From sequence record PQ390715.1: DNA of 64,000 nucleotides. The stretch is one strand, 5' to 3'. Shown here in pieces: positions 25,544-54,234 of the stretch (its first letter is position 1; each line of letters opens with the position of its first letter). The translations under genes and the position numbers were made by a program. The notes under the pieces are model-generated. The model was not told the origin of the DNA and did not search any database. It saw only the letters and a list, made by a program, of their open reading frames with translations.

Positions 25544-26041
25544 TTAAGTCACTGCATTATACTTCTCTATAGCATTAGTAATATTTAATATAGCTTCAGG
25601 AACCATTTCTTTATTGTATTCACGTTTTAAATTTTCCATTTTCTTAATAATTTCCAAGAAAAATGGCAAAATACATGAAGTATCTGTAAAATTACATGAG
25701 TACAAAGTACTCATTTGAAATAATTCACCTGAATCAATATTAAGAGTATTGTATTCCTTAACAATGTTTTCGTTTGAATTGAAAATGTGAAATACTGTTC
25801 CCATGTGATGAAGATATACACCATTCTCATTTTGAATATGGCATGGTGTGATTACAATAGCAGTGTTGTCAATATTATTTACTATTGATAAACGTAGACT
25901 ATGTAAACCTAAAATAACAGTACAATCACTTGAACTGCTTTGAATTTGGTCAGCAGTTTGTGTAACACTTGTAATATTTTCCCCATCAAGACAACTCTTG
26001 ATTTTATCAAATGAATTTTTCATTGATTTAGTTAGATACAT
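25544..26041 (-). CDS. family A paralogue
   Basis: DSGELFQMSTLY. Confidence 0.75.
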   Translation of the reverse strand: MYLTKSMKNSFDKIKSCLDGENITSVTQTADQIQSSSSDCTVILGLHSLRLSIVNNIDNTAIVITPCHIQNENGVYLHHMGTVFHIFNSNENIVKEYNTLNIDSGELFQMSTLYSCNFTDTSCILPFFLEIIKKMENLKREYNKEMVPEAILNITNAIEKYNAVT

Positions 26042-26445
26042 TTATGAACACCTTCGAAATATTTGATTAATGATTTTATCATATCGCTACTAATGCCATG
26101 TAAGTCAACACCTAAACACTCGTATTGAAAAAAATCAATATCCTCCAGTGTGTTTAGATCAATTTCCACCTTATCATGACCCAACGAATTCATAATAACG
26201 TTTTTATCATTAATTGTCAAGAAAGTTTTTTTATTTGAACCTAAAAAGATTTTTACATGTTTTTTTGGCATTACATCATAAGATAAAGATTGTGAACCAT
26301 AAATGTATATGCCTTCCATTGAACCAATATCTATAAAATATAGACGAATCCCTTTGTGGTATTTTGACTCCTTAGTCATCGCCTCTATTAGTTCATCTGT
26401 GGTTGTTAACCTTGTTTCTTTCTTCTCTAAATTGCTCAAATGCAT
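26032..26445 (-). CDS. family A paralogue
   Basis: EDIDFFQYECLG. Confidence 0.7.
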   Translation of the reverse strand: MHLSNLEKKETRLTTTDELIEAMTKESKYHKGIRLYFIDIGSMEGIYIYGSQSLSYDVMPKKHVKIFLGSNKKTFLTINDKNVIMNSLGHDKVEIDLNTLEDIDFFQYECLGVDLHGISSDMIKSLIKYFEGVHKCI

Positions 26446-26866
26446 AAAATAATACCTTGATCATTTGTAATGTTTCTGACATTACATCAGCAGAAAATTG
26501 AACATCAGTGTATTTTACCATAGTACTTTGAGTAAAGAAAGTAGCTTCAATATCTTCAAGGTCAAATGGCTCATCAAATAAATTAGTACTGAACATATCA
26601 GTTTTTTTCTTATAAGTCAACATAAACTTAGCACTGTATCTCAATACAATTTCATCTTTACTTACTAAAATTCGTGCAATGTTCTGTCTACCCAGTGTTG
26701 TAATGTTAACATTAAACGTATTCTTTCGTGCCTCAACAATATCAACGAAATAACCATCACCTTGGTAAACGTTATGACGAACTTCTAATCCTTGTTGAAC
26801 TGTATTGAACAGTGCGTCCTGGATAAAATAATTTGCAGTATCGATGTTTCCTAAAATATCTAACAT
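26393..26866 (-). CDS. family A paralogue (divergent)
   Basis: IEATFFTQSTMV. Confidence 0.7.
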   Translation of the reverse strand: MLDILGNIDTANYFIQDALFNTVQQGLEVRHNVYQGDGYFVDIVEARKNTFNVNITTLGRQNIARILVSKDEIVLRYSAKFMLTYKKKTDMFSTNLFDEPFDLEDIEATFFTQSTMVKYTDVQFSADVMSETLQMIKVLFYAFEQFREERNKVNNHR

Positions 26867-27396
26867 AACTTCTCCTTTATAGCTGTCATATTTAGAAGAA
26901 ATTCAGTAAGCAATTCCTCCGTAACATGCTCTGTATACCAGAATATCACAATATCTTTTGAAAGTCGTGTATTCATAAAAATATCTACTAACTCTTTGTA
27001 GAACTCTAGTGTTTCGAGATTTGTGAGAATTAACGAGTACTGAAAGAGTAATTCTTCCGTTAGATTAAATTCTGGATAAAGTAAATCATTGAACTCATGT
27101 GATGCAGTTTGAACTTTAATTTCTTTGAAGTTATTGGTTATACAACCGGAATAAATATTTCTGTGCAACTCTCTGTACAACGCAGCATAATCTATGAATT
27201 TTGCTTTAGGGTTAAAATCAAGAACACTTTCACCTTTATATGACAATCGGTGGAACGCCGAGAACATAGTCACTTCCCACGGTTGCTTAATATCTAGCTC
27301 AGTGATATCAATATTATTGGACAGAAGAACCGTAAAAATCTCACCAATCTTTAATAGTAATTTTGTACGTGCCAGTGCTACCATCGGTTCAGACAT
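26860..27396 (-). CDS. family A paralogue
   Basis: TEELLFQYSLIL. Confidence 0.75.
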   Translation of the reverse strand: MSEPMVALARTKLLLKIGEIFTVLLSNNIDITELDIKQPWEVTMFSAFHRLSYKGESVLDFNPKAKFIDYAALYRELHRNIYSGCITNNFKEIKVQTASHEFNDLLYPEFNLTEELLFQYSLILTNLETLEFYKELVDIFMNTRLSKDIVIFWYTEHVTEELLTEFLLNMTAIKEKLC

Positions 27397-27809
27397 TATA
27401 CACCTTCATATTCATCAAGAAAATCTTCGATAATCATTTCAGCTTCATCCATATGCATAGCATCAACTTCAATGATGCGAACTTTAGATGCATCCCAAAT
27501 CATAAAGCTAGGAACATTGTCTGGCTCGTAATCATTTTTGTACTGAACAGCATCATAACCTTGAGCAGTGCAATTCTCAATAAGTGAACGCCACTCATCA
27601 TCACTGCCTAAATCTTCACACAGAAGCACGTTATCAACATCAACTTCTAAGGTATGCAAGTATACTGTACATGCGTCTACTACGTTCAGTGGGCTTCTCA
27701 GCTTGCGTAATGCAGCTTCCAAAGCACTGTGTTTACCTCCCATATGAAGACCACCATACGGGATATAAAAGTTATCAATTTTTACAGTACTCGCATGATA
27801 CAGTTTCAT
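27396..27809 (-). CDS. ADP-ribosyltransferase-fold protein (ART-PolyVal-like)
   Basis: LYHAS...GGLHMG...VYLHTLEV...GYDAVQYKNDYE...SFMIWDASKV, matching the YHGT/GYDxIxYxNxxE pattern. Confidence 0.6.
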   Translation of the reverse strand: MKLYHASTVKIDNFYIPYGGLHMGGKHSALEAALRKLRSPLNVVDACTVYLHTLEVDVDNVLLCEDLGSDDEWRSLIENCTAQGYDAVQYKNDYEPDNVPSFMIWDASKVRIIEVDAMHMDEAEMIIEDFLDEYEGV

Positions 27810-27818
27810 ATTTCATTC

Positions 27819-28403
27819 CTATTTCAGTACTTTAGTCAATGCTTTCACAGCGGTTTCGAGTTGAGCATAGTCGTTAATTGTAAGGTAATGAATACCATGT
27901 GCCTTCATTTCAGCATCTATTTTACTATATAAATCAAACATGTCAAGGATATGATTGTATGCATATGAAGTATTTGAAACACACAATTCTTGGAACAAAC
28001 GTTCTTCCAAGTCATTCACAACTTCTCCATGAATGTCAAGTACTACACCATCTTTGTAAGTGTAGTACTCTTCACTCCACTCTTCAGAAAGTCGGAACAG
28101 TAACGGATTCCCGCCGAACACTTCCATGTCATAGGAATTTATCTCACTAAGTAGTGTTTCACCTGGTTCTGGTGTGAAGTCAAAATATGCGAGTGTTGTA
28201 CCATCATAGTCCTTGAGTGATATACCAGTATGATTTAAGGTTACTTCACCATAATTATTATTCTTGAACTTGATTTTGATATTAATCTCAATGTATTTTA
28301 TTGTCTCATCATCACTGAAATTGTAATCAACTTTATACTTTTTCCAAAGAAGTTTGATATCTTTGAAGTACTTTAATTTACTTTCAATTTCTTTAAAGTC
28401 CAT
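27819..28403 (-). CDS. family A paralogue
   Basis: LEERLFQELCVS. Confidence 0.72.
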   Translation of the reverse strand: MDFKEIESKLKYFKDIKLLWKKYKVDYNFSDDETIKYIEINIKIKFKNNNYGEVTLNHTGISLKDYDGTTLAYFDFTPEPGETLLSEINSYDMEVFGGNPLLFRLSEEWSEEYYTYKDGVVLDIHGEVVNDLEERLFQELCVSNTSYAYNHILDMFDLYSKIDAEMKAHGIHYLTINDYAQLETAVKALTKVLK

Positions 28404-28995
28404 CTGGAACCACCATTTCTTGAATGTGCTTACATTTTATATTTGCCATATTGGTATGTAATATAATGCTGTGTTTACGCAATGATTTTACTTTGTAGCA
28501 CTCATTGAGTACTGAAATAATTCCCCATAACTCTTCTACACTAATAGTGATAGGTTCACTTGTACTCAGTTGCATCAGTGCTGCTTGAACATCATCTTTG
28601 TTATTAATAGTGAACTGGATTCCTCTTTTGAGAATTTTAGTTTTTGGATTGTACTCAGCTAATACATCACCTTCTGGATAACCCTCATGAAGTAATAATG
28701 TTGTTTCAAAATCACCGCAGTTGAAGTTAATTTCATCATAATCAGGTACACAAATGTTCCCTTCCCCGTACTCATTAGGTTCAGATTCTAGTGTTAAAAT
28801 ACGCTGAGTCTCATTGCTCAGGATGATAGAATCATTCCAGTACTGGGTAGTGAATGCTCTACGTTTCTTTTGAAAGCACATACTCGACATTGAACCATAC
28901 TTCTTGTATATGGACTTCTTGAACTCAATAGCAGCAGGAGCCACCTTGATAACTTCACGAATTAAGTCAATAGCTTCTTGATAACTTTTTCTCAT
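28393..28995 (-). CDS. family A paralogue (divergent)
   Basis: VQAALMQLSTSE. Confidence 0.7.
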   Translation of the reverse strand: MRKSYQEAIDLIREVIKVAPAAIEFKKSIYKKYGSMSSMCFQKKRRAFTTQYWNDSIILSNETQRILTLESEPNEYGEGNICVPDYDEINFNCGDFETTLLLHEGYPEGDVLAEYNPKTKILKRGIQFTINNKDDVQAALMQLSTSEPITISVEELWGIISVLNECYKVKSLRKHSIILHTNMANIKCKHIQEMVVPDGL

Positions 28996-29543
28996 TTATC
29001 GTATCCATATAAAATATGATCTAGTGTACTTTGTACTTCTTCATGAAAGAATGAAGGGTAAACTTGTATCAATTTATCTTTAAGTTCAAGGGAATGGCAT
29101 AGTTCTAATGTTTTGTAACAATCCTCGTACTGTGCCAGATCATGTAATGTACTTAACTGAAAATGTTGTTCTTCGGAGTACAATAAATCATAAACCATAT
29201 TATCGGATAAAAGATTAGATTTGATTGAAGGATCAAGTACTGTCTGGTGGTGACCAACCCAAAAGATAGCTTTTGAGTTAATGTTATTACAACCCCATCC
29301 TTTCCCCATCTTTTGGTGAATAGCAAATACACAGGAATCATACAAATTAATGCTCAGACGTTCTTCGTCTGCATGGATAGTTACACCATCAATAGATAGT
29401 GTATATTTGAAATCCATAGCCCCCTCACTTCGTGCACGAGAACTAAAGACCAGATATCGATGAATTATGGTATTGATTTTATCTGTCCATCCATCAACAC
29501 ATTTGGATGCACATAATGTAAAAAGATCATGATTGTAGTTCAT
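28992..29543 (-). CDS. family A paralogue
   Basis: SEEQHFQLSTLHD. Confidence 0.75.
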   Translation of the reverse strand: MNYNHDLFTLCASKCVDGWTDKINTIIHRYLVFSSRARSEGAMDFKYTLSIDGVTIHADEERLSINLYDSCVFAIHQKMGKGWGCNNINSKAIFWVGHHQTVLDPSIKSNLLSDNMVYDLLYSEEQHFQLSTLHDLAQYEDCYKTLELCHSLELKDKLIQVYPSFFHEEVQSTLDHILYGYDK

Positions 29544-29604: not shown

Positions 29605-30186
29605 TTAATCCATCATAAGTGGGATAATTGCCCATATCTTTTTCATAATCATATCTTCAGTAAAAACAAATGTTTTAGGAGCAGTATATGATATTGACAC
29701 ACCAAATGGAAGTTTGATTGCATCATCAATTATATTATGAATATCAAACCATGTTTTAACATAATCATACGGTGGAAGTTCATGAATTGTACTTAACTGA
29801 AAGTAATTCTCTTCACCAAAATCACTATATTCAATTTCACAAATTTTAGTGAATTGATGATTCCATTTAGATATAATACTATTTTTATTATTGTACATAG
29901 TAGTTCTATGCATAAAACCATTTTTGCTAGTATGATTTGATATTACGTTTTCTTCAATGTCAGTATCTATTTTAAAATTCATATCAAAGTTGTAGTACGG
30001 ACTTGACGATTCTTTGAATTTTAAATGTAAATTGCGATTGTTATTAATTTCAATTTCAATACAAAACACATCTGAATCAAAACGATTAAACTTGTAATCG
30101 TTATCTTCCGGTAGATTCTGTATTTTTTTCATAATACTAAGCATAGGGTGTACTACACTTTTAATAAAATCATTTGTTATTTTCAT
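29605..30186 (-). CDS. family A paralogue
   Basis: GEENYFQLSTIHE. Confidence 0.75.
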   Translation of the reverse strand: MKITNDFIKSVVHPMLSIMKKIQNLPEDNDYKFNRFDSDVFCIEIEINNNRNLHLKFKESSSPYYNFDMNFKIDTDIEENVISNHTSKNGFMHRTTMYNNKNSIISKWNHQFTKICEIEYSDFGEENYFQLSTIHELPPYDYVKTWFDIHNIIDDAIKLPFGVSISYTAPKTFVFTEDMIMKKIWAIIPLMMD

Positions 30187-30679
30187 AGTATTCCTTTAGA
30201 ACTTTATATGATTCAACAATACTATCTTGTGTATAATTTGAACTATATACAACAGCACTTGTTTTAGTTGACCATAGATATGACATAAAGGTTATAACAC
30301 TACTACATGGACTTAATGTATTGTTTTGAAATTCAATTTCTTCAATGTTATCAGTACTGGTATAGATGAATTGGAAAGTACCCATTGATTTATTGGACAG
30401 CGATACTATAGTAGAATCCGTACCAGGACTATACATGAATGTCTCATTACTAATTGAACTATCATTAGTATATGATGGTTTGGGAATATAAATCAAACGC
30501 ATGATATCGCGTTCAAGACCTGACTTATTACTTTCCACCAAAGAAATCATATCTATATTTGATATATGTTCAACACTGACATGGAACTTTTTGTCGAGAA
30601 TCACATCTCCATGAGAATTTTTATATGAAGACAAAATCTCATACATCTCAACTAATTCGCGTGCATTTAATAAACTCAT
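30170..30679 (-). CDS. family A paralogue
   Basis: IEEIEFQNNTLS. Confidence 0.7.
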   Translation of the reverse strand: MSLLNARELVEMYEILSSYKNSHGDVILDKKFHVSVEHISNIDMISLVESNKSGLERDIMRLIYIPKPSYTNDSSISNETFMYSPGTDSTIVSLSNKSMGTFQFIYTSTDNIEEIEFQNNTLSPCSSVITFMSYLWSTKTSAVVYSSNYTQDSIVESYKVLKEYYENNK

Positions 30680-31104
30680 GTTTTGTCTCTTAATGAAAGA
30701 ATATCCTTAGTATAAACTGAAACAGAAATATGATTATATTTCATCATTAATTTATACACATAAGAAGCTAGTACTAAATCGTAAATTAATTTAGTATTAT
30801 ACAGTACTTGGTATTGTAACGCAAGTGAATCAATATCATCTTTACTTTCAATATCCAGAAATGTACCGAAAAATGTAGTACCGTAGAGATGAAAAGTGGA
30901 ATTAATGCAATCAATGCATTCATTGTCCAATAGAGTAGATGCTGATGCCCTCGGTGAATCCCAAATAGTCACTGCGTGTATGCCCTCAACGAACAAATCT
31001 ATCCATATTTTGTGTCGTTGTCTTTTTTTTGTTTTATAATTTTCTGGATTTGAAAGTGTAGTTTCAATTATATCCCATATGTACAAACAATCATCTCTTG
31101 TCAT
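30676..31104 (-). CDS. family A paralogue (divergent)
   Basis: IDSLALQYQVLY. Confidence 0.65.
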   Translation of the reverse strand: MTRDDCLYIWDIIETTLSNPENYKTKKRQRHKIWIDLFVEGIHAVTIWDSPRASASTLLDNECIDCINSTFHLYGTTFFGTFLDIESKDDIDSLALQYQVLYNTKLIYDLVLASYVYKLMMKYNHISVSVYTKDILSLRDKT

Positions 31105-31682
31105 TGTAGCACCTTATCCATTGCTGCATTTAATGCTTTTAAACGATCAACATTCAAAGTATTGAAGATGTACGTTCCTAAAATGTGGAAATCGAATTGG
31201 TTCTTTTTGTATGTATGATAAATTAAACTACAAAAAACAACAGTACTAAGAACCTCTTCAGGTATAACAGTGCTCATCTGGAACAGTTCTTCTTCAACTG
31301 TACTTGAATCTGGATTGATAGCTTTTAACACATACTCTTCATCACCGAATAGTACTTTAATATTATATAAAACACCAATAGTACTAATATGGAATGGGTG
31401 ATGTGAAAAACTTCCATCATCCTTAATTTGTATATCGGTTCTAATCTCACACTCTTCATTACTTTTACTTTTATTTTTTACAATACAAATATTTCTGGCC
31501 CCAGAAATAGTAAGAATACCGTGGTCGTAATATTCATTTGACCAACATTTGGATGAAATTGATACATCACGGATGAGATATTGTTTTTCAATTTCTTTCG
31601 CACTACCAACAATTGATAGCATTTTTTTACTGATATCATATAATAACTGATGGCGTTCTGTCATATAACTATAAGCGTTCAT
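31101..31682 (-). CDS. family A paralogue
   Basis: VEEELFQMSTVI. Confidence 0.75.
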   Translation of the reverse strand: MNAYSYMTERHQLLYDISKKMLSIVGSAKEIEKQYLIRDVSISSKCWSNEYYDHGILTISGARNICIVKNKSKSNEECEIRTDIQIKDDGSFSHHPFHISTIGVLYNIKVLFGDEEYVLKAINPDSSTVEEELFQMSTVIPEEVLSTVVFCSLIYHTYKKNQFDFHILGTYIFNTLNVDRLKALNAAMDKVLQ

Positions 31683-32253
31683 ATTTTTCCTTAACAGATT
31701 CTATATTTTGAAGTAGTGTATTCAGAACATCAGTCTTGCAATTGATAAAATCATTGTACATAACTAGTTCACCACAATCAAGAATTTTTGCAGTATCGTA
31801 ACAAAGCATTAAGTACTCGAATTCTTTGTAATTGTCCAACAAGGATTTCTGGAAAATGAATGCATCTCGAATATCTTCACTTTGGTCTAATTCTGGTGGA
31901 ACATCCAACCCAATAAAACCATCATCTTCACTGAAATTAGATTCTACAATTTTATTCATTTTTTCATGTAATGCATTCGCAAATACCATATTATAAGAAA
32001 TAGAACCAATACGTTCACGATTTCTGGATGTGCGAATGTACATAGTAATCGTATCCCATGAACTTTTAATTTTTTTAGAAAATTCATAAGTTTTATATAC
32101 ATCCAACTGAACTGAACCAAAACGATGTTTGGATTTGTTTTCAATTTTCAGTCGATAATTATCAAATTCAACAATTTCTGTAATGTCATGAATCTCTGAA
32201 AGTTCTGCAATGTCATGCATGAGTCTCAAAATTTTAGTTCTGATATGGTTCAT
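31669..32253 (-). CDS. family A paralogue
   Basis: RDAFIFQKSLLD. Confidence 0.72.
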   Translation of the reverse strand: MNHIRTKILRLMHDIAELSEIHDITEIVEFDNYRLKIENKSKHRFGSVQLDVYKTYEFSKKIKSSWDTITMYIRTSRNRERIGSISYNMVFANALHEKMNKIVESNFSEDDGFIGLDVPPELDQSEDIRDAFIFQKSLLDNYKEFEYLMLCYDTAKILDCGELVMYNDFINCKTDVLNTLLQNIESVKEKYERL

Positions 32254-32843: not shown

Positions 32844-32872
32844 AGTATAACACACCTGAATGCTCTTGTAAA
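32844..32872 (-). promoter_or_regulatory. sigma70 promoter
   Basis: TTTACA-N17-TATACT with TG. Confidence 0.75.
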
Positions 32873-32883
32873 GCCATAAACAC

Positions 32884-32906
32884 AAAAAGACCCATACGGG
32901 TCTTTA
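32884..32906 (-). terminator. Rho-independent terminator
   Basis: AAAGACCCGTATGGGTCTTTTT. Confidence 0.8.
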
Positions 32907-33470
32907 TTTTGGTAAAACACTGTCAATGTACGCTAGAACCTCATCTCGAAGGTACGTTCCATCTATAGTTAGGTAATAGTTCATGGGAATATCACTCCCA
33001 ACCTTCTCATAAATTTTCATACATGATATCACATCTTCATCACAAATGGTACTCAATTGAAAAAGAACTTCATCGGTTAACGGTACGATATCATGTTTAG
33101 ATAGGGGATTTGTATTTTCATTCAACACAATATTAATCAAGTTAGGAGTATTCTTTGACGAAATATAACGATGCTTACTACGAATTACCATTCTCGATAG
33201 TGAAATACTGGAACTCCATCTTGGATCAACATCTTCATATGATAACGATATTAACATCTCGTGAAAATCTTGAAATTTCATTGACGCATAATATGTTTTA
33301 TCCTCACCGTACATACCAAATGATTTAAATTCAATATCCCCCACTTTGTATGTATCGACATCATTATTTGAGAACTTTATTAAACTATTAATTAGTCTAA
33401 TTAGAATATCATCTTTATCCATTCTTAAATAACTCCAAGTGCATGTCGTATAAATCTCTGAAGTCTTCAT
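32904..33470 (-). CDS. family A paralogue
   Basis: TDEVLFQLSTIC. Confidence 0.75.
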   Translation of the reverse strand: MKTSEIYTTCTWSYLRMDKDDILIRLINSLIKFSNNDVDTYKVGDIEFKSFGMYGEDKTYYASMKFQDFHEMLISLSYEDVDPRWSSSISLSRMVIRSKHRYISSKNTPNLINIVLNENTNPLSKHDIVPLTDEVLFQLSTICDEDVISCMKIYEKVGSDIPMNYYLTIDGTYLRDEVLAYIDSVLPK

Positions 33471-43277: not shown

Positions 43278-43278
43278 T

Positions 43279-45398: not shown

Positions 45399-45597
45399 CT
45401 TAATCTCTACTATAATTAATAAGGTAAACTCCAATATAAGGAGAACGTTCGGCGGCGGGGTATTTTTTGTTTCAAGAAACATGAACTGTACTCTGAAAAA
45501 CACAATATAAAACTTTATATTAAACATATACCTTAGCATGTTTTTCAGCGGAAATTTTTTTGACCCCCCCCCTGCGGCCTGTCAAAATGAAACGTCT

Positions 45598-46815: not shown

Positions 46816-47098
46816 ATATATTTTGTCTGAACAAAGGAACTAATTGAACTAAACTCGTTTGCATAATAATATGCATATGTACATTGTCATATGCCGTTTC
46901 GTATTGAAAACGTGCTGCTTCATCTTCTATGAAATTCGGAACTTGGACTGGATTCTCAAAATTTGTCCTTGTACTGAACTGTACATCATTGTCCTGTACC
47001 TTAATACCATATGAATTATCATTGTTATCAACTACATCAAATTCAATTAAACTACCATCTTTACTGACGTTTACTATATAAACCGAAAATCGACTCAT
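46754..47098 (-). CDS. family A paralogue
   Basis: DEAARFQYETAYD. Confidence 0.7.
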   Translation of the reverse strand: MSRFSVYIVNVSKDGSLIEFDVVDNNDNSYGIKVQDNDVQFSTRTNFENPVQVPNFIEDEAARFQYETAYDNVHMHIIMQTSLVQLVPLFRQNIYVHEVSINGIQSSVLFGTNM

Positions 47099-47610
47099 AA
47101 ACCTATTTCCTCTAAATCTTTGACAAATGTATCATAATCCGATAATGACAAAAATATGTCTGTACTGATGTTCTGACGTAATGTATTAAACAAATTATGT
47201 ACCTGTAATAAATCAGGTGAATAAATCAGGGATTGCTGGAAATACGATTCTTCTGTATCTAATATATCCCTGCACTCAATTTCACGAACTCGTTGGTATA
47301 TTGAATTTAATAATACATTTTCATCTTTGAGCATTGGAAGGTATCGGATGTACATGTTCTCCATCAACTCATCTTGGATTGAACCCCTGAACTGCAACAC
47401 GTATTCAAAACACATCACTACATCTTGTAGGTAATTGGCACTGTACTGATTACTATACACGATTTTATGACAACTGAACTCGGAATCATTTCTGAACCAA
47501 TTGTTACCCTCTTTCCTGTACTTATGACTAAGCTTCCCATCCTCCAACGCTCGAATAAACTTCATAATGTTAATTGCAAAATCATATGAATGATGCTTGT
47601 GTTGATGCAT
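47095..47610 (-). CDS. family A paralogue (long type)
   Basis: TEESYFQQSLIY. Confidence 0.75.
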   Translation of the reverse strand: MHQHKHHSYDFAINIMKFIRALEDGKLSHKYRKEGNNWFRNDSEFSCHKIVYSNQYSANYLQDVVMCFEYVLQFRGSIQDELMENMYIRYLPMLKDENVLLNSIYQRVREIECRDILDTEESYFQQSLIYSPDLLQVHNLFNTLRQNISTDIFLSLSDYDTFVKDLEEIGL

Positions 47611-47813: not shown

Positions 47814-47814
47814 A

Positions 47815-48438
47815 CTATATATCCAACCCTTTTACAACATCTACGAAATGTTCAAACACTTCTTTTGAAAAATAACCTCCTTCACAAAAAAGCATACTAA
47901 ACGGTGGCAGCATGTCCGATAACTCTTTAGCTAAATTGATTTCTGCTCTTAACTCTTGAACATCAATGATATCATGTACTAAAGATAATTGAAACATGAA
48001 TGCATCTACATCTTCATTCATTTCTGAATTGTAATATAACTCTTCAGGGAATTTGTCGGTTTCGTAATAATAAAAAACTTTATTGTTGAACACACCACTA
48101 ATAGGAACATCATTTTCATCTTTCTTTGAAATGTTTGTTTCCCATGACTCGATGTTATTAGGAACAAAAAAATCATAGGCTGATTTAGAACCCTGTACTG
48201 AATCCAACTTTATTCCATAATATTCCGTATCCATGTATTTCTGCTGCAATGTAATACCACGTGTACTGACATTCACTTGGAATATATCATCTTTATCTGG
48301 AACACTAAATGGAATACATAACACTGAATTCTCAGGGTATTTGGCAATGAATGCATCCAGCACTTTATTAAGCACTGGAATGGCAATTTTACTGTACTGC
48401 ATCAAATCATACATTTTAATTCTGGTCATATCATTCAC
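47815..48438 (-). CDS. family A paralogue
   Basis: VDAFMFQLSLVHD. Confidence 0.75.
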   Translation of the reverse strand: MNDMTRIKMYDLMQYSKIAIPVLNKVLDAFIAKYPENSVLCIPFSVPDKDDIFQVNVSTRGITLQQKYMDTEYYGIKLDSVQGSKSAYDFFVPNNIESWETNISKKDENDVPISGVFNNKVFYYYETDKFPEELYYNSEMNEDVDAFMFQLSLVHDIIDVQELRAEINLAKELSDMLPPFSMLFCEGGYFSKEVFEHFVDVVKGLDI

Positions 48439-48970
48439 CTGTGTATGTTTTCACCCTTAGCGATTCAAAATCCCATACATCACTGATTGTACCATTGTGC
48501 CTGTAATCATAATATTCTACTAATACATTATACAATAACTTCAACGATACAAATTCATGATTCCACGGAGCTTTATTCTCATGAACACATTTGGTGATAT
48601 AAGGTATAATATATAAACTAAACAACACTAATGGTGAATGTATACATTGCATTTGAAAATATTCTTCTTCTTGCATACAATGTTCAGGAATAATTAGATC
48701 ATAATGTGTCTCAAATAAATGTAAACCTATTGTGGTTTTTTTCGTATCACATGCGTACCATATTGTACTATCCGAAATAAATGGAATGATACCATTATTG
48801 TTTGCAATGTACATCATATGGTAAGAGCGATTTGTCTTGTTAAATATCTCGATACTTTCGATATTACTACAAATCATGTATTCAAGGCAATCAATGATCT
48901 TATCTTTAAATGTACCAATTTCATTGAATGACATTGCTTTCTGTACTTTTGATACTGTTGTACTGCTCAT
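48431..48970 (-). CDS. family A paralogue
   Basis: QEEEYFQMQCIH. Confidence 0.72.
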   Translation of the reverse strand: MSSTTVSKVQKAMSFNEIGTFKDKIIDCLEYMICSNIESIEIFNKTNRSYHMMYIANNNGIIPFISDSTIWYACDTKKTTIGLHLFETHYDLIIPEHCMQEEEYFQMQCIHSPLVLFSLYIIPYITKCVHENKAPWNHEFVSLKLLYNVLVEYYDYRHNGTISDVWDFESLRVKTYTGE

Positions 48971-49509
48971 ATGTTCTCCTTAAAAAAATCCAAATACTCT
49001 TCATTGAAAGCATATGTATCATCTTTTATGTTATGCACCACATAATCATAAAGAGCTATGAATGCAGGGATTATGATCTTACATGATTTATTATTGTATT
49101 TGTACTGCTCCAAATCAACGGTGTTCAATTTAGCAATAAGCATAGCAGCAAAGATATCTTCATGGCGGTGTACTGTGCTGTACTGAAAATACTCATCCTC
49201 TCCAATATCGGGATGATATAACGGTATAACCAAATTATTACGAATTGACATTTTATATTTTTGTAATGCAGCTAAATGCATGAACCACAATCTATCTTCA
49301 TGGAAAGATGGAAAAATAATTTTGTCTGTGCTAATAAAAATTTCTTCATTTCGATTATTTGTCACAAGAGGTGCATACATTTTAATTTTTGCAGATTTAA
49401 TAATTAAATTAAAAATATAATGAATCTTATGAACTGCACTTGATGCATCTTCGTATGTACTTGGGATTATGAAACTCACTATATGTTCTCCTTTAAAATG
49501 AATACACAT
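48967..49509 (-). CDS. family A paralogue
   Basis: GEDEYFQYSTVH. Confidence 0.72.
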   Translation of the reverse strand: MCIHFKGEHIVSFIIPSTYEDASSAVHKIHYIFNLIIKSAKIKMYAPLVTNNRNEEIFISTDKIIFPSFHEDRLWFMHLAALQKYKMSIRNNLVIPLYHPDIGEDEYFQYSTVHRHEDIFAAMLIAKLNTVDLEQYKYNNKSCKIIIPAFIALYDYVVHNIKDDTYAFNEEYLDFFKENI

Positions 49510-49536
49510 GATAACAGCTTTGGTCTTCTATGTCAA
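49508..49536 (-). promoter_or_regulatory. sigma70 promoter
   Basis: TTGACA-N17-TATCAT with TG. Confidence 0.75.
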
Positions 49537-49546: not shown

Positions 49547-49574
49547 AAAAAAGCCCATATCTTACGATACAGGC
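49547..49574 (-). terminator. Rho-independent terminator
   Basis: GCCTGTATC-GTAA-GATATGGGC + TTTTTT. Confidence 0.7.
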
Positions 49575-50068
49575 GTTATGGGCATGTTGATTTGAATTTC
49601 ATTGTACAAATCATCAATATATAGACATGAAAAAAACACACTATCTTGTACTATATTGTTGTGATAAAGCATTTTAAATACTACATAAAAAAATAAATCA
49701 ATATCATCGTGGACTAAATTCTGCTGGAACCACCACTCGTCTGTTAAATCTTGTGCATTAAAATCATCAGGAACTTCAATGAACGACATATCACAATCTT
49801 CTTTGTACTCAAACCACATGTCGTCATTCGGATAACGTTCATGCTTCTCTGGGTAACAATTGCTGGGATTAAATGTTAAAATATTAAACCCCGTAGAGCA
49901 ACGTTCTTTATTTAAAAATGTATTATTCCATACCTGATATTTTTCACCAACATCAAGCTCTTCTGTTACTGATTTTATTGCACATAATGTACTGTATATT
50001 GTTTCTATCTTGTGAACATATTTAAATGCAGCATCTAAGCTGAACTCTAAATCATACATGTACTGCAT
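49562..50068 (-). CDS. family A paralogue
   Basis: TDEWWFQQNLVHD. Confidence 0.72.
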   Translation of the reverse strand: MQYMYDLEFSLDAAFKYVHKIETIYSTLCAIKSVTEELDVGEKYQVWNNTFLNKERCSTGFNILTFNPSNCYPEKHERYPNDDMWFEYKEDCDMSFIEVPDDFNAQDLTDEWWFQQNLVHDDIDLFFYVVFKMLYHNNIVQDSVFFSCLYIDDLYNEIQINMPITPVS

Positions 50069-50388
50069 AAAATTACCTCAACTAAAGCAAGGACTGTATT
50101 GAATTCCACTATACTTGTAATTCCTTGAAGGTACATGTACTTTGCTACTACATATTTCTGTACTAAATTATAATTATTAAATTCCTCAAAATTGTAATTT
50201 AGAACAAAATCTGTACTCAAAAATATCTTATGCATCTCTAATGCACTTTGATAATACGCGTACAACTCACTGATATCAATACTGGTTAAATTATATTGTT
50301 CATATCTATGATACGGGATGGCTTCAATTTCAATACTATAAAACCATTCTCTTAACTTATTAATATCAAATGTATTATTCAGCTTCAT
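50047..50388 (-). CDS. hypothetical protein
   Basis: 113 aa, helical. Confidence 0.6.
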   Translation of the reverse strand: MKLNNTFDINKLREWFYSIEIEAIPYHRYEQYNLTSIDISELYAYYQSALEMHKIFLSTDFVLNYNFEEFNNYNLVQKYVVAKYMYLQGITSIVEFNTVLALVEVILCSTCMI

Positions 50389-50941
50389 AACTCAATACCT
50401 CCATTAAACACTCATACACACCATCAATCGCATAAGCACAAAAATTGAAATTAATTTTGTGATTCTTGTGTAATGGACTATTGTGTACTGTACTCATTAT
50501 GACATTATAAAATAACAAACGCACTGGTACAAGCATTGAACCTTGGAAAAATTCTTCCTCTGATTTATATGTATTGTACTCTATTGTTTTGTTCGTTTCT
50601 TTATCATATGTTACCATTACTAATGGGGCATTTTTATTATACCATGCGTACTCTAAATCATTCTTTCCAATAACAGCACCAGGGGCGAAATCCAAAAGAC
50701 CAATAACACTACGGGAATTTGGGGTATCAGGTGTATTGAATCGTTTATCAAAATGACTCGTGCACGCAATATATGTATTGTACTTCGATGGAATAATACC
50801 AATACATTTGTGGAAATGACGCTTGTGATATTTCTGGGCATTATATAAGGCTGCAACAATACAAGCTAACTTTTGTCCCATAAGGATTGCATTAGCGTAG
50901 GTGTACTGAATTTCATTGCTGGTACGGTACTTCGAGGTCAT
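50375..50941 (-). CDS. family A paralogue
   Basis: SEEEFFQGSMLV. Confidence 0.75.
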   Translation of the reverse strand: MTSKYRTSNEIQYTYANAILMGQKLACIVAALYNAQKYHKRHFHKCIGIIPSKYNTYIACTSHFDKRFNTPDTPNSRSVIGLLDFAPGAVIGKNDLEYAWYNKNAPLVMVTYDKETNKTIEYNTYKSEEEFFQGSMLVPVRLLFYNVIMSTVHNSPLHKNHKINFNFCAYAIDGVYECLMEVLSYEAE

Positions 50942-51224
50942 AATATTTCCTTTGCCATATCATGGGCTTAAAATCAATAACAGCTTTCTGTATCTTTTTT
51001 AATAATAAGACATCATAACCACCCGTGTCAATCACTAATTGCTGTTGGAACAATTCTTCATCGGATAATGTATTGAAATCTACAAAATAATCTGTAACTA
51101 TCGAATCATTTAAATGTGCCATGTACCAACCTGAACTTCTTGAATAAATCAAATTCCACCCATCGTCATCATCTTCTAATTCAACATAAATCATATCTGG
51201 GGTATACATCATTTTATACTTCAT
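50913..51224 (-). CDS. family A paralogue (short type)
   Basis: DFNTLSDEELFQQQLVID. Confidence 0.75.
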   Translation of the reverse strand: MKYKMMYTPDMIYVELEDDDDGWNLIYSRSSGWYMAHLNDSIVTDYFVDFNTLSDEELFQQQLVIDTGGYDVLLLKKIQKAVIDFKPMIWQRKYYDLEVPYQQ

Positions 51225-51762
51225 AACTATATCCTTGCATTAATAAATCATAAACTACATGGACTAAATTTAATTGAATATAAAATTTTAAACCTTTAAT
51301 TAATGGATTCAAATGCATTGTACTGAATAACATTAGATACATCATCTCATGCGGTTTTGTGATTAATGATTTTTGAAATACTTCAGCTTCATCATAAGGG
51401 TCTATGAACTGAAATTTGTCTTCATCATAATTTGTATTGGAATGCTGATATATAAAATAATCATCATTGGTATTGTACCACAAATATCCTTCGAATCCTG
51501 TACTAACATCTTTGGTCAATGGGGATGCTGATACTGGATTTGAACTGATTAATGCACCTACATCAACAATCCCCGTTGTATCATATTCGATTTCAACATC
51601 AATATCAATGTATTTCCTTGCGATATCTGCGTTTATGGACAAATATAAACTACCACCTGTCCTCTGACTCAGGATTCCATCTATATGCGATATAGGATGG
51701 TTGTTATTGAGGATAAGCATTATTGTACTTATCTTGTGTGCTAATAACTCTATCTCATTCAT
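51214..51762 (-). CDS. family A paralogue
   Basis: DEAEVFQKSLIT. Confidence 0.75.
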   Translation of the reverse strand: MNEIELLAHKISTIMLILNNNHPISHIDGILSQRTGGSLYLSINADIARKYIDIDVEIEYDTTGIVDVGALISSNPVSASPLTKDVSTGFEGYLWYNTNDDYFIYQHSNTNYDEDKFQFIDPYDEAEVFQKSLITKPHEMMYLMLFSTMHLNPLIKGLKFYIQLNLVHVVYDLLMQGYSYEV

Positions 51763-52735: not shown

Positions 52736-52923
52736 ACTATCTCCGTTCGCAACGAATTTATATAATAATGAACAAATTGTTCTTGTGAACGTGTTCCAAG
52801 AAAAATAAACATATCAAACTCTGTTGTTTTTAAATTCAATGCATCTTTTGTAAAACTCCTGTTGAATTCCCTGTACTTTTGGGTCTTCCATTCTTGATTA
52901 ATTGTCTTGTATATCGATTTCAA
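52705..52923 (-). CDS. family B paralogue (dispersed)
   Basis: IFLGTRSQEQF. Confidence 0.72.
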   Translation of the reverse strand: MKSIYKTINQEWKTQKYREFNRSFTKDALNLKTTEFDMFIFLGTRSQEQFVHYYINSLRTEIVCKTQGIIKR

Positions 52924-53224
52924 TGATTCTCCCTGATGTACCTTGTATTAGCTTATCATACATATCGAGCATCACTTTTTGAATACTAATTAGTACTGGC
53001 ATCGTGCAAATATCAATGTCGTATACTAAGCTGTACTGGAATAATTCATCTTCCTGCATTTGTACTAAATTAGGTAAAGGATAATTGTCTGCCTCTTCAT
53101 CCTGGTACTTGAAATGCATAACACCATCCTTTTTGTACAAAAGAATGTCAATATCACCTAACTCATCAGCATAACCAAAAATACATATACTCGATGTTTT
53201 TGCTATATTAAATTTCATCTCCAC
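52898..53224 (-). CDS. family A paralogue (short type)
   Basis: QEDELFQYSLVYD. Confidence 0.75.
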   Translation of the reverse strand: MEMKFNIAKTSSICIFGYADELGDIDILLYKKDGVMHFKYQDEEADNYPLPNLVQMQEDELFQYSLVYDIDICTMPVLISIQKVMLDMYDKLIQGTSGRIIEIDIQDN

Positions 53225-53460
53225 CTCTCACCGTCAGCACAAGAGTACTGGTACGTTGTCGTTAGGGTAGGGACCATGTTTGTAATGGGCATGTTGTTAA
53301 CAATAACCGTAACAGGCATAAGAATCGTCTCTTCTCTACTCTGTCCTGTCCTTGTGCAATTCATCTTCTGCATTTCATCTGAATCCATGAAATACAATAC
53401 AAATGGTGCAATCCCAAGAACAATACACAAAACGATAAGGAAATTTAAAAAATTTAACAT
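53215..53460 (-). CDS. small membrane-anchored protein
   Basis: N-terminal TM; Cys pair in the tail. Confidence 0.7.
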   Translation of the reverse strand: MLNFLNFLIVLCIVLGIAPFVLYFMDSDEMQKMNCTRTGQSREETILMPVTVIVNNMPITNMVPTLTTTYQYSCADGERWR

Positions 53461-53489
53461 AATTTTTACCCTATGATTAACGTTAGTGT

Positions 53490-53518
53490 ACTATATCAGT
53501 AATGAAAAGTACTGTCAA
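53490..53518 (-). promoter_or_regulatory. sigma70 promoter
   Basis: TTGACA-N17-TATAGT with TG; AGTACT abuts the -35. Confidence 0.8.
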
Positions 53519-53519
53519 G

Positions 53520-53924
53520 CTAGTATTGCACTGTTCTAATGAAAGTACCTGAACTCATGGATTTAAGCTTATGAACCTCTTCCTGTATACCCTTGAGCAA
53601 CTCTAAAGGTATAGGTACATCATGTACTAAGCTGTACTGAAAGTATTCTTCTTCAGATAAAGTACTAACATCTGGAACGCCAATTTTAGTTATATAATCT
53701 TGATGTGTTGACCAATAAATTATATCTTCAGTAGAATTGTACTCCCCATATACTGAACAGTATTGATGAATATCTTTCCTGTACCCTTGAGCAATAAAGA
53801 ACTTATCTACTGCATTACCAGCATTAATAGAATTCACTTCGATTGTCACAGTACTTGAGCTTGTATAACTCTTAGTATTATCAGTACTTTTAATACTCAA
53901 CTGTGTGTTCTTCATAATCACCAT
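53520..53924 (-). CDS. family A paralogue (short type)
   Basis: DVSTLSEEEYFQYSLVHD. Confidence 0.78.
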   Translation of the reverse strand: MVIMKNTQLSIKSTDNTKSYTSSSTVTIEVNSINAGNAVDKFFIAQGYRKDIHQYCSVYGEYNSTEDIIYWSTHQDYITKIGVPDVSTLSEEEYFQYSLVHDVPIPLELLKGIQEEVHKLKSMSSGTFIRTVQY

Positions 53925-54234
53925 TAGGCTCCTGTTTAGATTCTTTCATTAGTACTATCATCTTATGTACTAATGGCATAGGAAACTCTAAATCCCATAC
54001 TAATGATTCCTGAAAGTATTCCTCTGGTGATAAAGTACTTAAATCTTTAATATCAACGTGCTTGTATATTTTATTTTCGTAATTAACAAATGATATATAT
54101 AAATCACTAACATAAGAATCATAGGTAATTGTGAATGGCTTACCCTTGTAATCCATTACATCTCTACATAGACTACTTTTGATATATGTATGTTCAAATG
54201 ATTTATATACCTTGAGTTGTATATTAGTTTTCAT
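53890..54234 (-). CDS. family A paralogue (short type)
   Basis: DLSTLSPEEYFQESLVWD. Confidence 0.78.
   Translation of the reverse strand: MKTNIQLKVYKSFEHTYIKSSLCRDVMDYKGKPFTITYDSYVSDLYISFVNYENKIYKHVDIKDLSTLSPEEYFQESLVWDLEFPMPLVHKMIVLMKESKQEPNGDYEEHTVEY

What the first reader, a model, noticed from the sequence alone, without database searches (positions are those of the whole stretch)
25544..54234. About 50-gene array of diverged paralogues tied together by one short acidic-FQ motif (family A)
Seen: almost every ORF over 29 kb carries a motif of the form [ST]-E-E-x-[LYF]-F-Q-x-S-[LT]-[VI]-x-D about two-thirds along, followed by an amphipathic helix (e.g. SEEELFQQST, TEEEFFQYSTVY, SEEYYFQNSTVY, QEDELFQYSLVYD). 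The beta-rich N-terminal parts are barely alignable by eye. Inference: a conserved docking module on hypervariable target-binding domains is the logic of an adaptor library (analogy: F-box or poxvirus PRANC proteins). About 50 specificities could be plugged into one shared phage or host hub (protease, RNA polymerase, virion/ejection or membrane partner), plausibly to neutralise diverse host defence proteins. I recognise no named family with this motif.
Basis: partly seen in the sequence, partly recalled or inferred. Interest (0 to 1): 0.9.

Follow-up and report, generated by a model that had tools for sequence, protein, structure and literature searches.

The report
Jumbo-phage multigene family with FQ motif
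A giant E. coli phage devotes about 20 kb to some 45 diverged copies of one small, uncharacterised protein that shares a short acidic-Phe-Gln motif; the family is real and has a fold with no solved relative, but the motif looks like part of that fold rather than a separable docking tag, and the function is unknown.

Summary
The window is bases 1-64000 of Escherichia phage SHEFM2K, a 348-kb jumbo myovirus of the 121Q/Asteriusvirus group. Between 25544 and 54234, 42 of the 56 minus-strand ORFs of at least 100 aa belong to one family. One firm member (13194-13883) and one borderline member (13880-14458) lie at 13.2-14.5 kb, next to RNA ligase. F and Q are invariant, and synonymous codons vary freely, so selection acts on the protein.

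Pfam, NCBIfam, PADLOC, PDB sequences and Foldseek against the PDB all found nothing. The only relatives are hypothetical proteins of RaK2-like jumbo phages. Two AlphaFold models (pLDDT 85-87, pTM 0.8) give one compact alpha/beta domain. The motif is the start of its first core helix, with an N-cap, acidic first turn and hydrophobic staple.

Orthologues are under purifying selection along their whole length, at omega 0.32 (N-terminal part), 0.15 (motif) and 0.29 (C-terminal tail). None of the phAPEC6 orthologues is a virion protein. Consensus sigma-70 promoters sit in the intergenic gaps.

My best reading is an old, early-expressed, cytoplasmic single-scaffold family, probably a repertoire of binders of host or defence proteins. 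The "adaptor library on a shared hub" idea is neither supported nor excluded.

The parts
25544..26041 (-). family A member (165 aa; DSGELFQMSTLY)
   Evidence: (E 1.6e-7)
26860..27396 (-). family A member (178 aa)
   Evidence: E 4e-11
28992..29543 (-). family A member (183 aa)
   Evidence: E 3.6e-7
29605..30186 (-). family A member (193 aa)
30170..30679 (-). diverged family A member (169 aa; IEEIEFQNNTL)
   Evidence: E 3.9e-4
31101..31682 (-). family A member (193 aa)
31669..32253 (-). diverged family A member (194 aa; RDAFIFQKSLL)
   Evidence: E 1.4e-3
32904..33470 (-). family A member (188 aa)
33415..33978 (-). family A member (187 aa)
34501..35004 (-). family A member (167 aa)
34992..35405 (-). 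family A member, short form (137 aa)
35389..35751 (-). family A member, short form (120 aa)
35717..36211 (-). family A member (164 aa)
36208..36684 (-). family A member (158 aa)
36744..37328 (-). family A member (194 aa as ORF; relatives start about 16 codons later)
37288..37629 (-). family A member, short form (113 aa)
37608..38051 (-). family A member (147 aa)
37975..38337 (-). family A member, short form (120 aa)
38936..39496 (-). family A member (186 aa)
40384..40833 (-). family A member (149 aa)
41138..41452 (-). family A member, short form (104 aa)
41449..43770 (-). youngest tandem cluster: five members (41449-41901, 41879-42367, 42367-42810, 42807-43277, 43279-43770), 35-56% aa identity; 43279-43770 is the protein modelled
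   Evidence: repeat family D1, spacing about 450 nt
43780..44139 (-). family A member, short form (119 aa)
44136..44492 (-). family A member, short form (118 aa); second protein modelled
44492..44863 (-). family A member, short form (123 aa)
44860..45024 (-). truncated 54-aa copy of the 5' end of gene 44136-44492 (85-nt repeat, 96% identical)
   Evidence: D8
45021..45539 (-). family A member; the first about 47 codons of the ORF are probably not translated (phAPEC6 annotates 378 nt)
46201..46815 (-). family A member (204 aa)
46754..47098 (-). borderline member (114 aa; DEAARFQYETAYD)
   Evidence: E 0.018
47095..47610 (-). family A member (171 aa)
47815..48438 (-). diverged family A member (207 aa; VDAFMFQLSLVHD)
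   Evidence: E 3.1e-4
48431..48970 (-). family A member (179 aa)
48967..49509 (-). family A member (180 aa)
49562..50068 (-). family A member (168 aa)
50375..50941 (-). family A member (188 aa)
50913..51224 (-). family A member, short form (103 aa)
51214..51762 (-). family A member (182 aa)
52898..53224 (-). family A member, short form (108 aa)
53520..53924 (-). family A member, short form (134 aa)
53890..54234 (-). family A member, short form (114 aa)
13194..13883 (-). outlying family A member (229 aa; SEEEHFQLMMM) directly upstream of RNA ligase; its orthologue holds the same position in a distant uncultured jumbo phage
   Evidence: (E 5.3e-5)
13880..14458 (-). borderline outlying member (192 aa; GLPEHFQISTLYD), syntenic with clear members in locus L005
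   Evidence: (E 0.031)
39851..40387 (-). possible very diverged member (motif FDEQCFQLSCTD only)
36718..36747 (-). sigma-70 consensus promoter-like site (12/12, TG) in the gap upstream of 36208-36684
49508..49536 (-). sigma-70-like site (11/12, TG) in an intergenic gap, next to terminator-like hairpin 49553-49574
53490..53518 (-). sigma-70-like site (11/12, TG) in an intergenic gap
32844..32905 (-). terminator-like hairpin (32886-32905) followed by a sigma-70-like site (10/12, TG) in the gap 32829-32903

Best explanation
Family A is an old lineage-specific multigene family of RaK2-like jumbo phages of Enterobacterales. This genome has 43 firm and up to 46 copies. Asteriusvirus relatives have 41, Salmonella phage Munch at least 16, and an uncultured relative at least 9.

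Each gene encodes a small (about 100-230 aa), mostly acidic, soluble, non-virion protein. The protein has one compact alpha/beta domain: an optional N-terminal helix, a five-stranded beta meander, a short helix, a long helix, a final beta strand, and an optional C-terminal helix.

The 'acidic-FQ' motif is the beginning of the first core helix and its link to the second. A hydrophobic residue at -6 pairs with one at -1 as a staple. S/T/D at -5 is the N-cap, and the acidic residues at -4/-3(/-2) form the first turn. Then come the invariant F and Q, S at +3, hydrophobic residues at +4 to +6, and D/N at +7 as the N-cap of helix 2. On this reading the motif is conserved mainly because it defines the fold.

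The genes sit in tightly packed operons driven by sigma-70-type promoters. They lie upstream of early-type enzymes (Dam methylase, RNA ligase, polynucleotide kinase, DNA ligase, ClpP). They are therefore most likely made early, by host RNA polymerase, in the cytoplasm.

Inferred function: a repertoire of one-scaffold binders, inhibitors or decoys. Each would recognise a different host or defence protein through the variable beta-sheet and loop surface. The repertoire would have been built by tandem duplication and then kept by purifying selection.

Shown: family, motif, protein-level selection, phyletic range, lack of known relatives, purifying selection, absence from the virion proteome.
Predicted: the fold.
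Inferred: early timing, cytoplasmic action, binder function.
For: Identity of the window: (100% identity to PQ390715.1, same coordinates).

Family and motif.

Protein-level constraint. At the invariant F the codons are TTT 21 and TTC 18. At Q they are CAG 25 and CAA 14. The conserved Ser uses both codon boxes.

No known relative:
- Pfam, NCBIfam, PADLOC and a PDB sequence profile (47, best E 1.3) found nothing.
- Foldseek against the PDB found nothing for either model (best E 2.6 and 0.28).
- PHROGs returned only 'unknown function' families.
- BFVD matched only uncharacterised proteins of 121Q, SP27, RaK2, GAP32, Serratia phage BF and Yersinia phage fHe-Yen9-04.

Range: 193 clusters among 1.84 billion representatives. 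Of the 150 listed, 147 carry the motif. All named sources are contigs of about 350 kb, either jumbo phages or labelled as their hosts.

Fold: (pLDDT 85.4 and 86.9; pTM 0.80 and 0.82). The motif region is the most confident part.

Motif logo over 185 sequences.

Full-length homology: alignment spans.

Selection against ph0011:
- 38 of 43 members have an orthologue, with median identity 76%.
- Median dN/dS is 0.28, against 0.15 for flanking genes.
- By region, omega is 0.32 (N-terminal part), 0.15 (motif) and 0.29 (C-terminal tail).

Age: most paralogue pairs are only 23-40% identical. Syntenic arrays occur in Munch and in locus L005.

Not virion: the orthologues gp404c-gp466c are absent from the 62 phAPEC6 virion proteins.

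Soluble and acidic: median pI is 4.96, and no real member has a transmembrane-like segment.

Promoters: 6 of the 12 strongest minus-strand sigma-70-like sites lie in the 4% of the DNA that is intergenic.

Ongoing turnover: an 85-nt repeat at 96% identity makes a truncated copy. Close relatives differ by indels in the array.
Against: - No experiment or homology links any member to a target. The binder or anti-defence function is inferred from size, timing, copy number and analogy.
- dN/dS is below 1 everywhere, and most copies have stable orthologues across the genus. There is no arms-race signature at this time scale.
- I had no model coordinates, so burial of F and Q was not measured.
- An absolutely invariant Gln and an 89% conserved Ser are more than helix capping requires. 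They could mark a shared functional site.
- Early expression rests on promoter-like consensus sites only. I found no transcriptome for this phage group.
- The total number of promoter-like sites does not exceed the number in shuffled sequence.
- E-values for the 39 core members come from a model that contains them.
Confidence: 0.4

Rival explanations
1. Adaptor library. The E-E-x-x-F-Q-x-S element is a conserved surface that docks every member onto one shared hub, while the variable part selects different targets. A concrete candidate hub exists in the window: a phage-encoded ClpP (bases 1-638, minus strand), which would work with host ClpX or ClpA.
For: - Five polar positions stay conserved across paralogues with 12% mean identity.
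- Q is invariant in all 185 motif-bearing sequences collected.
- The short subfamily has a second nearly invariant Q in helix 2.
- A true ClpP homologue (PF00574, E 1.6e-41) is encoded on the same strand about 25 kb downstream. It is conserved at 66-76% identity in the phages that carry the family.
Against: - The proteins are predicted as single domains with full-length homology.
- The motif is never combined with other domain types.
- The conserved polar positions coincide with helix-capping positions.
- The tail after the motif is as variable as the N-terminal part.
- ClpP is also present in jumbo phages not seen to carry the family, such as PA5oct, Lak and XaC1. Co-occurrence is therefore not specific.
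- Neither model shows fold similarity to any solved structure, and no Clp adaptor appears among the top 50 Foldseek rows for either.
Confidence: 0.15
2. Shared ligand or catalytic site. The conserved E, E, Q, S and D/N residues form a common small-molecule, metal or nucleotide-binding pocket. The members would be sponges for immune signalling molecules, or small enzymes that differ in specificity.
For: Conserved acidic and polar residues cluster within 13 residues. The proteins are early, small, acidic and cytoplasmic, as many known phage sponges are (background knowledge, not tested here).
Against: - There is no match to any known sponge, enzyme or defence-related family in Pfam, PADLOC or the PDB.
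- No conserved residue lies outside the motif.
- About 45 paralogues for one pocket is hard to rationalise.
- The acidic residues sit at helix positions N1-N3, where they are expected for structural reasons.
Confidence: 0.1
3. Processing site. E-x-x-[Y/L]-F-Q followed by x-S resembles, from memory, the Gln-specific sites of 3C/NIa-type proteases. Each member would be cut after Q into an N-terminal beta part and a C-terminal piece of about 50 aa.
For: Pattern resemblance only: E at -4, an aromatic or Leu at -1, then F-Q, with G at +2 in 3 of 39 members and S at +3 in most.
Against: - The motif is predicted as a well-ordered helix inside the fold, with the highest pLDDT of the model. It is not an exposed extended linker.
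- I know of no Gln-specific protease in E. coli.
- The two phage genes annotated as proteases near this region are a ClpP homologue and a 198-aa protein with no Pfam match.
Confidence: 0.03
4. Virion or ejected proteins. The members would be internal-protein-like cargo, inner-body or scaffold components, with the motif acting as a packaging signal.
For: phAPEC6 has a capsid inner body whose components are not fully assigned (PMC7247149). T4-type phages carry variable internal-protein loci (background knowledge).
Against: None of gp404c-gp466c is among the 62 virion proteins found by MS. The genes lie in an early-type region behind sigma-70-like promoters.
Confidence: 0.03
5. Dispensable duplicated DNA. 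The array would be a by-product of recombination with little or no function.
For: Gene content differs among close relatives, 5 of 43 members lack an orthologue in ph0011, and a truncated copy exists.
Against: - All 43 firm members have intact reading frames.
- Median dN/dS is 0.28, and 0.15 at the motif.
- Synonymous changes are saturated between paralogues while the motif is kept.
- Arrays are retained in phages whose conserved neighbour proteins are only about 65% identical.
Confidence: 0.03

Closest known systems
PHROG families of unknown function (phrog_9317, 12674, 13866, 15629, 34636, 30243, 28549, 30978, 38478, 19795)
   Same: The window's proteins are members of these clusters, with E values down to 1e-138. 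Cross-hits between the clusters show that they are one superfamily.
   Different: PHROGs splits the family into many unlinked groups and gives no function, motif or fold. The unity of the family and its motif is not recorded there.
Paralogue-rich gene content reported for RaK2-like jumbo phages (RaK2 paper PMC3622015; CBB paper PMC5259590)
   Same: Those papers state that about 10% of RaK2 gene products, and 22 CBB ORFs, are paralogues of other proteins in the same phage. Family A is part of that phenomenon, and BFVD matches include RaK2 proteins.
   Different: In the text searched, neither paper describes this family, its motif, its copy number or its structure.
   Same: Dozens of tandem, deeply diverged paralogues in a giant virus genome, presumably directed at the host.
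   Different: Those families join a separable docking motif to independently folding repeat domains. Family A is predicted as one small domain with the motif inside it. It has no sequence or fold similarity to any Pfam family or solved structure.
Tandem arrays of immunity proteins (SUKH/Imm families) in bacterial polymorphic-toxin loci, and small early phage inhibitors of host proteins
   Same: Small, acidic alpha+beta proteins in arrays of diverged paralogues, plausibly each neutralising a different protein.
   Different: There is no Pfam match to any family and no match to a solved structure. The resemblance is functional analogy recalled from background knowledge and was not tested.
T4-type internal proteins (IPI-III) and their variable loci
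   Same: A variable set of small phage proteins aimed at host defences.
   Different: Internal proteins carry an N-terminal capsid-targeting sequence and are packaged. Family A has an internal motif and was not found in virions.

Membership tests
Family A itself (RaK2-like jumbo-phage 'acidic-FQ' family; PHROG 9317/12674/13866 group) | Full-length HMM match plus the motif h-[STD]-[ED]-[ED]-x-h-F-Q-x-S-[LT]-[VIL]-[aromatic]-[DN] | tested here: met
   43 ORFs at E<2e-3. The motif pattern is present in 40 of 43. Logo. PHROG hits.
Docking-motif adaptor families (F-box, PRANC, BTB type) | Sequence match to the docking domain | tested here: not met
   No Pfam hit at E<=1 for the 10 members scanned. 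NCBIfam and PADLOC gave nothing consistent for all 39: only isolated weak single-member hits.
Docking-motif adaptor families (F-box, PRANC, BTB type) | Separable docking module combined with independently folding, varied target-binding domains | tested here: not met
   Models are single compact domains with pTM 0.80-0.82. Homology runs the full length. All members share one architecture.
Docking-motif adaptor families (F-box, PRANC, BTB type) | All members bind one common hub protein | not testable with these tools
   This needs AP-MS or co-folding. Only a candidate hub (phage ClpP) could be named.
Known anti-phage-defence or counter-defence protein families with a profile or solved structure | Sequence or fold similarity | tested here: not met
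   PADLOC gave nothing consistent. Pfam gave nothing. The best PDB profile hit has E 1.3. Foldseek against the PDB gave best E 2.6 and 0.28.
Virion internal or ejected proteins (T4 IP-like) | Presence in purified virions | tested here: not met
   The phAPEC6 orthologues gp404c-gp466c are absent from the 62 MS-identified virion proteins.
Virion internal or ejected proteins (T4 IP-like) | N-terminal capsid-targeting sequence removed by the prohead protease | tested here: not met
   The only conserved element is internal, at median residue 109.
Substrates of Gln-specific (3C/NIa-like) proteases | Exposed, extended E-x-x-Y-x-Q/(S,G) site, and a cognate protease in the system | tested here: inconclusive
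   The pattern partly fits, but the segment is predicted helical with pLDDT 94-97. No such protease was identified: one search found a ClpP and one protein with no domain match.

The most novel reading that the evidence does not exclude
The roughly 45 proteins are a plug-in library that shares one partner through the E-E-x-x-F-Q-x-S element. The partner could be, for example, the phage's own ClpP working with host Clp unfoldases. Each member would deliver or sequester a different host defence protein, giving this jumbo-phage clade a broad, modular counter-defence system built on a fold with no solved relative.
Probability: 0.12. Interest if true: 0.9.

Novelty: new member of a known kind. Interest (0 to 1): 0.55.

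Why it matters
About 6% of a 348-kb phage genome (20 kb) goes to one uncharacterised protein family. The family is kept under purifying selection across a whole clade of Enterobacterales jumbo phages, several of which are being proposed for therapy.

Among phages this expansion is comparable in scale to the multigene families of poxviruses or African swine fever virus. Its predicted fold has no solved relative, and it has a sharply defined motif that gives a clean mutational handle (FQ to AA).

If the members are host- or defence-directed binders, the array is a ready-made panel of some 45 candidates for finding new phage inhibitors of bacterial proteins. If they share a hub, it would be the first adaptor-library logic described in a phage.

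Even the conservative reading helps annotation. It merges more than ten unlinked 'unknown' PHROGs into one family with a signature.

Tried and rejected
1. DNA-level explanation of the motif (an embedded promoter, a recombination site or an RNA element). Rejected: synonymous codons are mixed at every conserved position, and DNA identity around the motif is only 60-74% (family D2).
2. Known-family assignment. Pfam, NCBIfam, PADLOC, a PDB profile search and two Foldseek PDB searches were all negative.
3. The search for related loci with alignment A1 on genome contigs and viral contigs. Phyletic range was taken instead from the 1.84-billion-protein profile search and cluster look-ups.
4. A link between family A and the neighbouring family of about 70-aa proteins (family B). 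hhalign gives probability 0.3%, so they are unrelated.
5. Virion role. Rejected on the phAPEC6 proteome.
6. Positive selection on the N-terminal part. Not seen: omega is 0.32, close to the 0.29 of the C-terminal tail.
7. Interspersed non-member ORFs. No Pfam domains. The 'putative ADP-ribosyl transferase' label that the ph0011 record gives to the orthologue of 27396-27809 has no Pfam support.
8. Literature. Nothing on this family in papers on 121Q, PBECO4, phAPEC6, Sharanji, RaK2, CBB or the jumbo-phage comparative survey. One search was too broad and returned nothing useful.
9. Burial of F and Q. I could not compute it, because the structure tool returns no coordinates.

Full report
**Where the window comes from**

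Bases 40000-48000 match Escherichia phage SHEFM2K (PQ390715.1, 348,006 bp) at 100% identity and at the same coordinates, so the window is bases 1-64000 of that genome. The same stretch is at least 95% identical in about 20 other Asteriusvirus jumbo coliphages, including 121Q, G17, phAPEC6 and slurp01. Every gene under it is annotated 'hypothetical protein'. Almost all genes in the window are on the minus strand.

**Check of the observation**

- A scan of all ORFs shows the FQ motif in most minus-strand ORFs between 25.5 and 54.2 kb.
- BLAST clustering gives a core of 27 ORFs.
- Iterated HMM searches within the window give 39 members at E<1e-3.
- An HMM enlarged with 147 outside relatives adds 30170-30679, 31669-32253, 47815-48438 and 13194-13883 at E<2e-3. 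It leaves 46754-47098 and 13880-14458 borderline. Synteny with a distant phage supports 13880-14458 as a true member.
- Within 25544-54234 there are 56 non-overlapping minus ORFs of at least 100 aa. Of these, 42 are members, covering 20.1 of 28.7 kb.
- A motif pattern hits 40 of 43 members and 1 of 116 other ORFs. Shuffled member sequences give 0.22 hits.
- In the 39-sequence alignment only F and Q are invariant, and mean column identity is 12%.
- The motif lies at median residue 109 and is followed by 39-75 residues.

The corrections are a count of about 45 rather than 50, about three-quarters of the larger ORFs rather than nearly all, and one firm and one borderline member outside the stated range.

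**The constraint is on the protein**

At the invariant F the codons are TTT 21 and TTC 18. At Q they are CAG 25 and CAA 14. The conserved Ser uses both AGY and TCN codons. Nucleotide identity around the motif is only 60-74% (family D2). A hidden DNA or RNA signal is therefore excluded.

**What the proteins look like**

- Members are 103-229 aa long, with median pI 4.96. None has a transmembrane-like segment, apart from a probably untranslated N-terminal extension of ORF 45021-45539.
- The long member 43279-43770 was modelled with the paralogue alignment and gives pLDDT 85.4 and pTM 0.80. Its elements are helix 3-21, five strands, a short helix 103-107, helix 113-119 (EEYYFQQ), helix 125-139, strand 145-148 and helix 149-158.
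- The short member 44136-44492 gives pLDDT 86.9 and pTM 0.82. It has five strands, helix 65-74 (the motif), helix 83-99 and strand 109-112.
- The common core is therefore a beta meander, two helices and a closing strand. Long members add terminal helices.
- The motif region is the most confidently predicted part of the models.
- HMM alignments to close and distant relatives span nearly the whole length. The N-terminal parts are diverged but homologous.

**Reading the motif**

The logo below comes from 185 family sequences. Positions are numbered from the invariant F as position 0.

| Position | Residues | Frequency |
|---|---|---|
| -6 | hydrophobic | 70% |
| -5 | S/T/D/N | 84% |
| -4 | acidic | 89% |
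| -3 | acidic | 85% |
| -2 | E | 35% |
| -1 | hydrophobic | 92% |
| 0 | F | invariant |
| +1 | Q | invariant |
| +3 | S | 89% |
| +4 | L or T | 93% |
| +5 | V/I/L | 92% |
| +6 | Y/F/W/H (aromatic or His) | 76% |
| +7 | D/N/S/T | 76% |

Set against the predicted helix boundaries, this is the classic signature of a helix start, which I name here from established knowledge of helix capping:
- an N-cap Ser/Thr;
- acidic residues in the first turn;
- a capping-box Glu at N3 in about a third of members;
- a hydrophobic staple between N' and N4.

In the long form, +7 is then the N-cap of the next helix. This explains most of the conserved polar positions structurally. The invariant Gln and the Ser at +3 remain unexplained. 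I could not measure burial, because the tool returns no coordinates.

**No known relatives**

- Pfam gave nothing for 10 members or for 20 neighbouring ORFs.
- NCBIfam and PADLOC gave nothing consistent for all 39 members.
- The best profile hit against PDB sequences has E 1.3.
- Foldseek against the PDB gave best E 2.6 and 0.28 for the two models.
- PHROGs places the proteins in more than ten separate 'unknown function' families that cross-hit one another.
- Foldseek against BFVD matched only uncharacterised proteins of 121Q, SP27, RaK2, GAP32, Serratia phage BF and Yersinia phage fHe-Yen9-04.

**Distribution**

- A profile search of 1.84 billion representative proteins found only 193 at E<=1e-3. 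Of the 150 listed, 147 carry the motif.
- The named sources are jumbo phages: Munch, SE_PL, 7t3, fENko-Kae01, JNE01 and A4. The others are contigs of about 350 kb labelled as Salmonella or E. coli. The rest are metagenomic contigs.
- Copy number is 41 in phAPEC6 and in ph0011, at least 16 in Salmonella phage Munch (a syntenic array upstream of Dam methylase), and at least 9 in an uncultured relative, locus L005.
- In L005 the array abuts RNA ligase and polynucleotide kinase. The orthologue of 13194-13883 holds the same position next to RnlA as in the window. It is 28% identical, while a conserved neighbour protein is 65% identical.

**Evolution**

- Most paralogue pairs are 23-40% identical over short stretches. 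Only 41449-43770 (five genes, 35-56%) and the short genes at 43780-45539 look recent.
- Against ph0011, 38 of 43 members have an orthologue, with median identity 76%. Median dN/dS is 0.28, against 0.15 for genes in the first 25 kb.
- Concatenated by region, omega is 0.32 for the N-terminal part, 0.15 for the motif and 0.29 for the tail.
- The family is therefore old and under purifying selection along its whole length, though it evolves faster than enzymes.
- Turnover continues. Five members lack an orthologue in ph0011. Close relatives differ by indels. An 85-nt repeat at 96% identity has created a truncated 54-aa copy of the start of gene 44136-44492.

**Expression and location**

- 55 of 69 gene junctions overlap, and only 8 gaps exceed 20 nt.
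- Of the 12 strongest minus-strand sigma-70-like sites between 25 and 64 kb, 6 lie in the 4% of the DNA that is intergenic. By my own binomial estimate this has a chance probability of about 4e-6.
- Three of those six lie inside the array, at 36747, 49536 and 53518. Terminator-like hairpins sit beside two gaps, at 32886-32905 and 49553-49574.
- The total count of promoter-like sites is not above the count in shuffled sequence, so only the placement is informative.
- Downstream on the same strand are Dam methylase, a cytidylyltransferase, RNA ligase, polynucleotide kinase, a phosphatase, DNA ligase and ClpP. This is an early-type neighbourhood.
- phAPEC6 is reported to encode a sigma factor. 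The more distant relative PA5oct relies on host RNA polymerase.
- In phAPEC6 the orthologues are gp404c-gp466c. None is among the 62 virion proteins detected by mass spectrometry.

**Interpretation**

The evidence supports an old, clade-specific multigene family of small cytoplasmic proteins. They are probably made early, are built on one predicted fold with no solved relative, and carry the FQ motif as a fold-defining helix start.

For function I commit to a one-scaffold repertoire of binders or inhibitors of host or defence proteins, with about 0.4 confidence. This is inference from timing, size, acidity, copy number and retention, not from any direct evidence.

- the single-domain prediction;
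- the full-length homology;
- the structural reading of the conserved residues;
- the similar evolutionary rates of the parts before and after the motif.

It is not excluded, because Q is invariant and burial could not be measured. A concrete candidate hub does exist: a true ClpP homologue at window 1-638. It is conserved in the phages that carry the family but also in others.

Weaker rivals are a shared ligand or catalytic site, a Gln-specific processing site, virion cargo, and non-functional duplicated DNA.

**Novelty**

Papers on this phage group note many paralogues in general terms. In the library searched, none describes this family, its motif or its structure. I rate it as a new member of a known kind, namely lineage-specific multigene families of large viruses, with moderate-to-good interest. 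The high-interest reading, a hub-docking counter-defence library, keeps a probability of about 0.12.

Noticed in passing
54224-60226 (also 39486-39873 and 52469-52923), minus strand: A second, unrelated tandem family ('family B'): 30 ORFs by BLAST clustering, each 63-104 aa, mostly 66-91 aa. In the 24 aligned, the motif is LGT[ND]xQE..V, with an invariant Q and an invariant L. There is no consistent Pfam match. hhalign probability against family A is 0.3%. Median dN/dS against ph0011 is 0.34.
   Followed up: partly
17066-18475, minus strand: A third small tandem family of five ORFs, each about 90-100 aa, found by BLAST clustering.
   Followed up: no
1-638, minus strand (the gene runs across the record origin): A true ClpP-family protease homologue. 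It is 97% identical to the ph0011 protein, which matches PF00574 at E 1.6e-41. The SHEFM2K record annotates it as 'head maturation protease'. It is conserved at 66-76% identity in K64-1, GAP32, BF, fHe-Yen9-04 and SE_PL, and more distantly in PA5oct and Lak phages. It is not listed among phAPEC6 virion proteins, which do include a separate prohead protease (gp227c).
   Followed up: partly
44410-44494 and 44939-45023: An 85-nt direct repeat at 96% identity. The upstream copy forms the start of a 54-aa ORF (44860-45024) that duplicates the first 28 residues of gene 44136-44492. This is a recent partial duplication inside the array.
   Followed up: yes
61601-63601, minus strand: Three consensus or near-consensus sigma-70 promoter-like sites lie in successive intergenic gaps: 63601-63574 (12/12), 62076-62049 (12/12) and 61629-61601 (11/12). 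At 61777-61742 a 12-bp-stem hairpin overlaps a promoter-like site. From memory, this is reminiscent of the promoter-plus-stem-loop cassettes described in T4-type phages.
   Followed up: no
27396-27809, minus strand: A non-member ORF inside the array. The ph0011 record labels its orthologue 'putative ADP-ribosyl transferase', but Pfam gives no support at E<=0.1.
   Followed up: partly
10034-14458, minus strand; locus L005 9483-13993: The gene order 'family A members - RnlA RNA ligase - small ORFs - polynucleotide kinase' is conserved between this phage and a distant uncultured jumbo phage. The oldest family members are therefore tied to the tRNA-repair module.
   Followed up: partly
Clusters of P0037, P0063 and P0054: Several public contigs of about 350 kb labelled Salmonella enterica or Escherichia coli carry these proteins. 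Their size and content suggest complete jumbo-phage genomes sequenced along with the host (carrier state or contamination).
   Followed up: no
45021-45539, minus strand: The longest ORF begins with a hydrophobic stretch of about 47 residues that phAPEC6 does not annotate. The phAPEC6 gene is 378 nt and carries an unsupported 'amidohydrolase 3' label. The real start is probably the internal ATG.
   Followed up: partly
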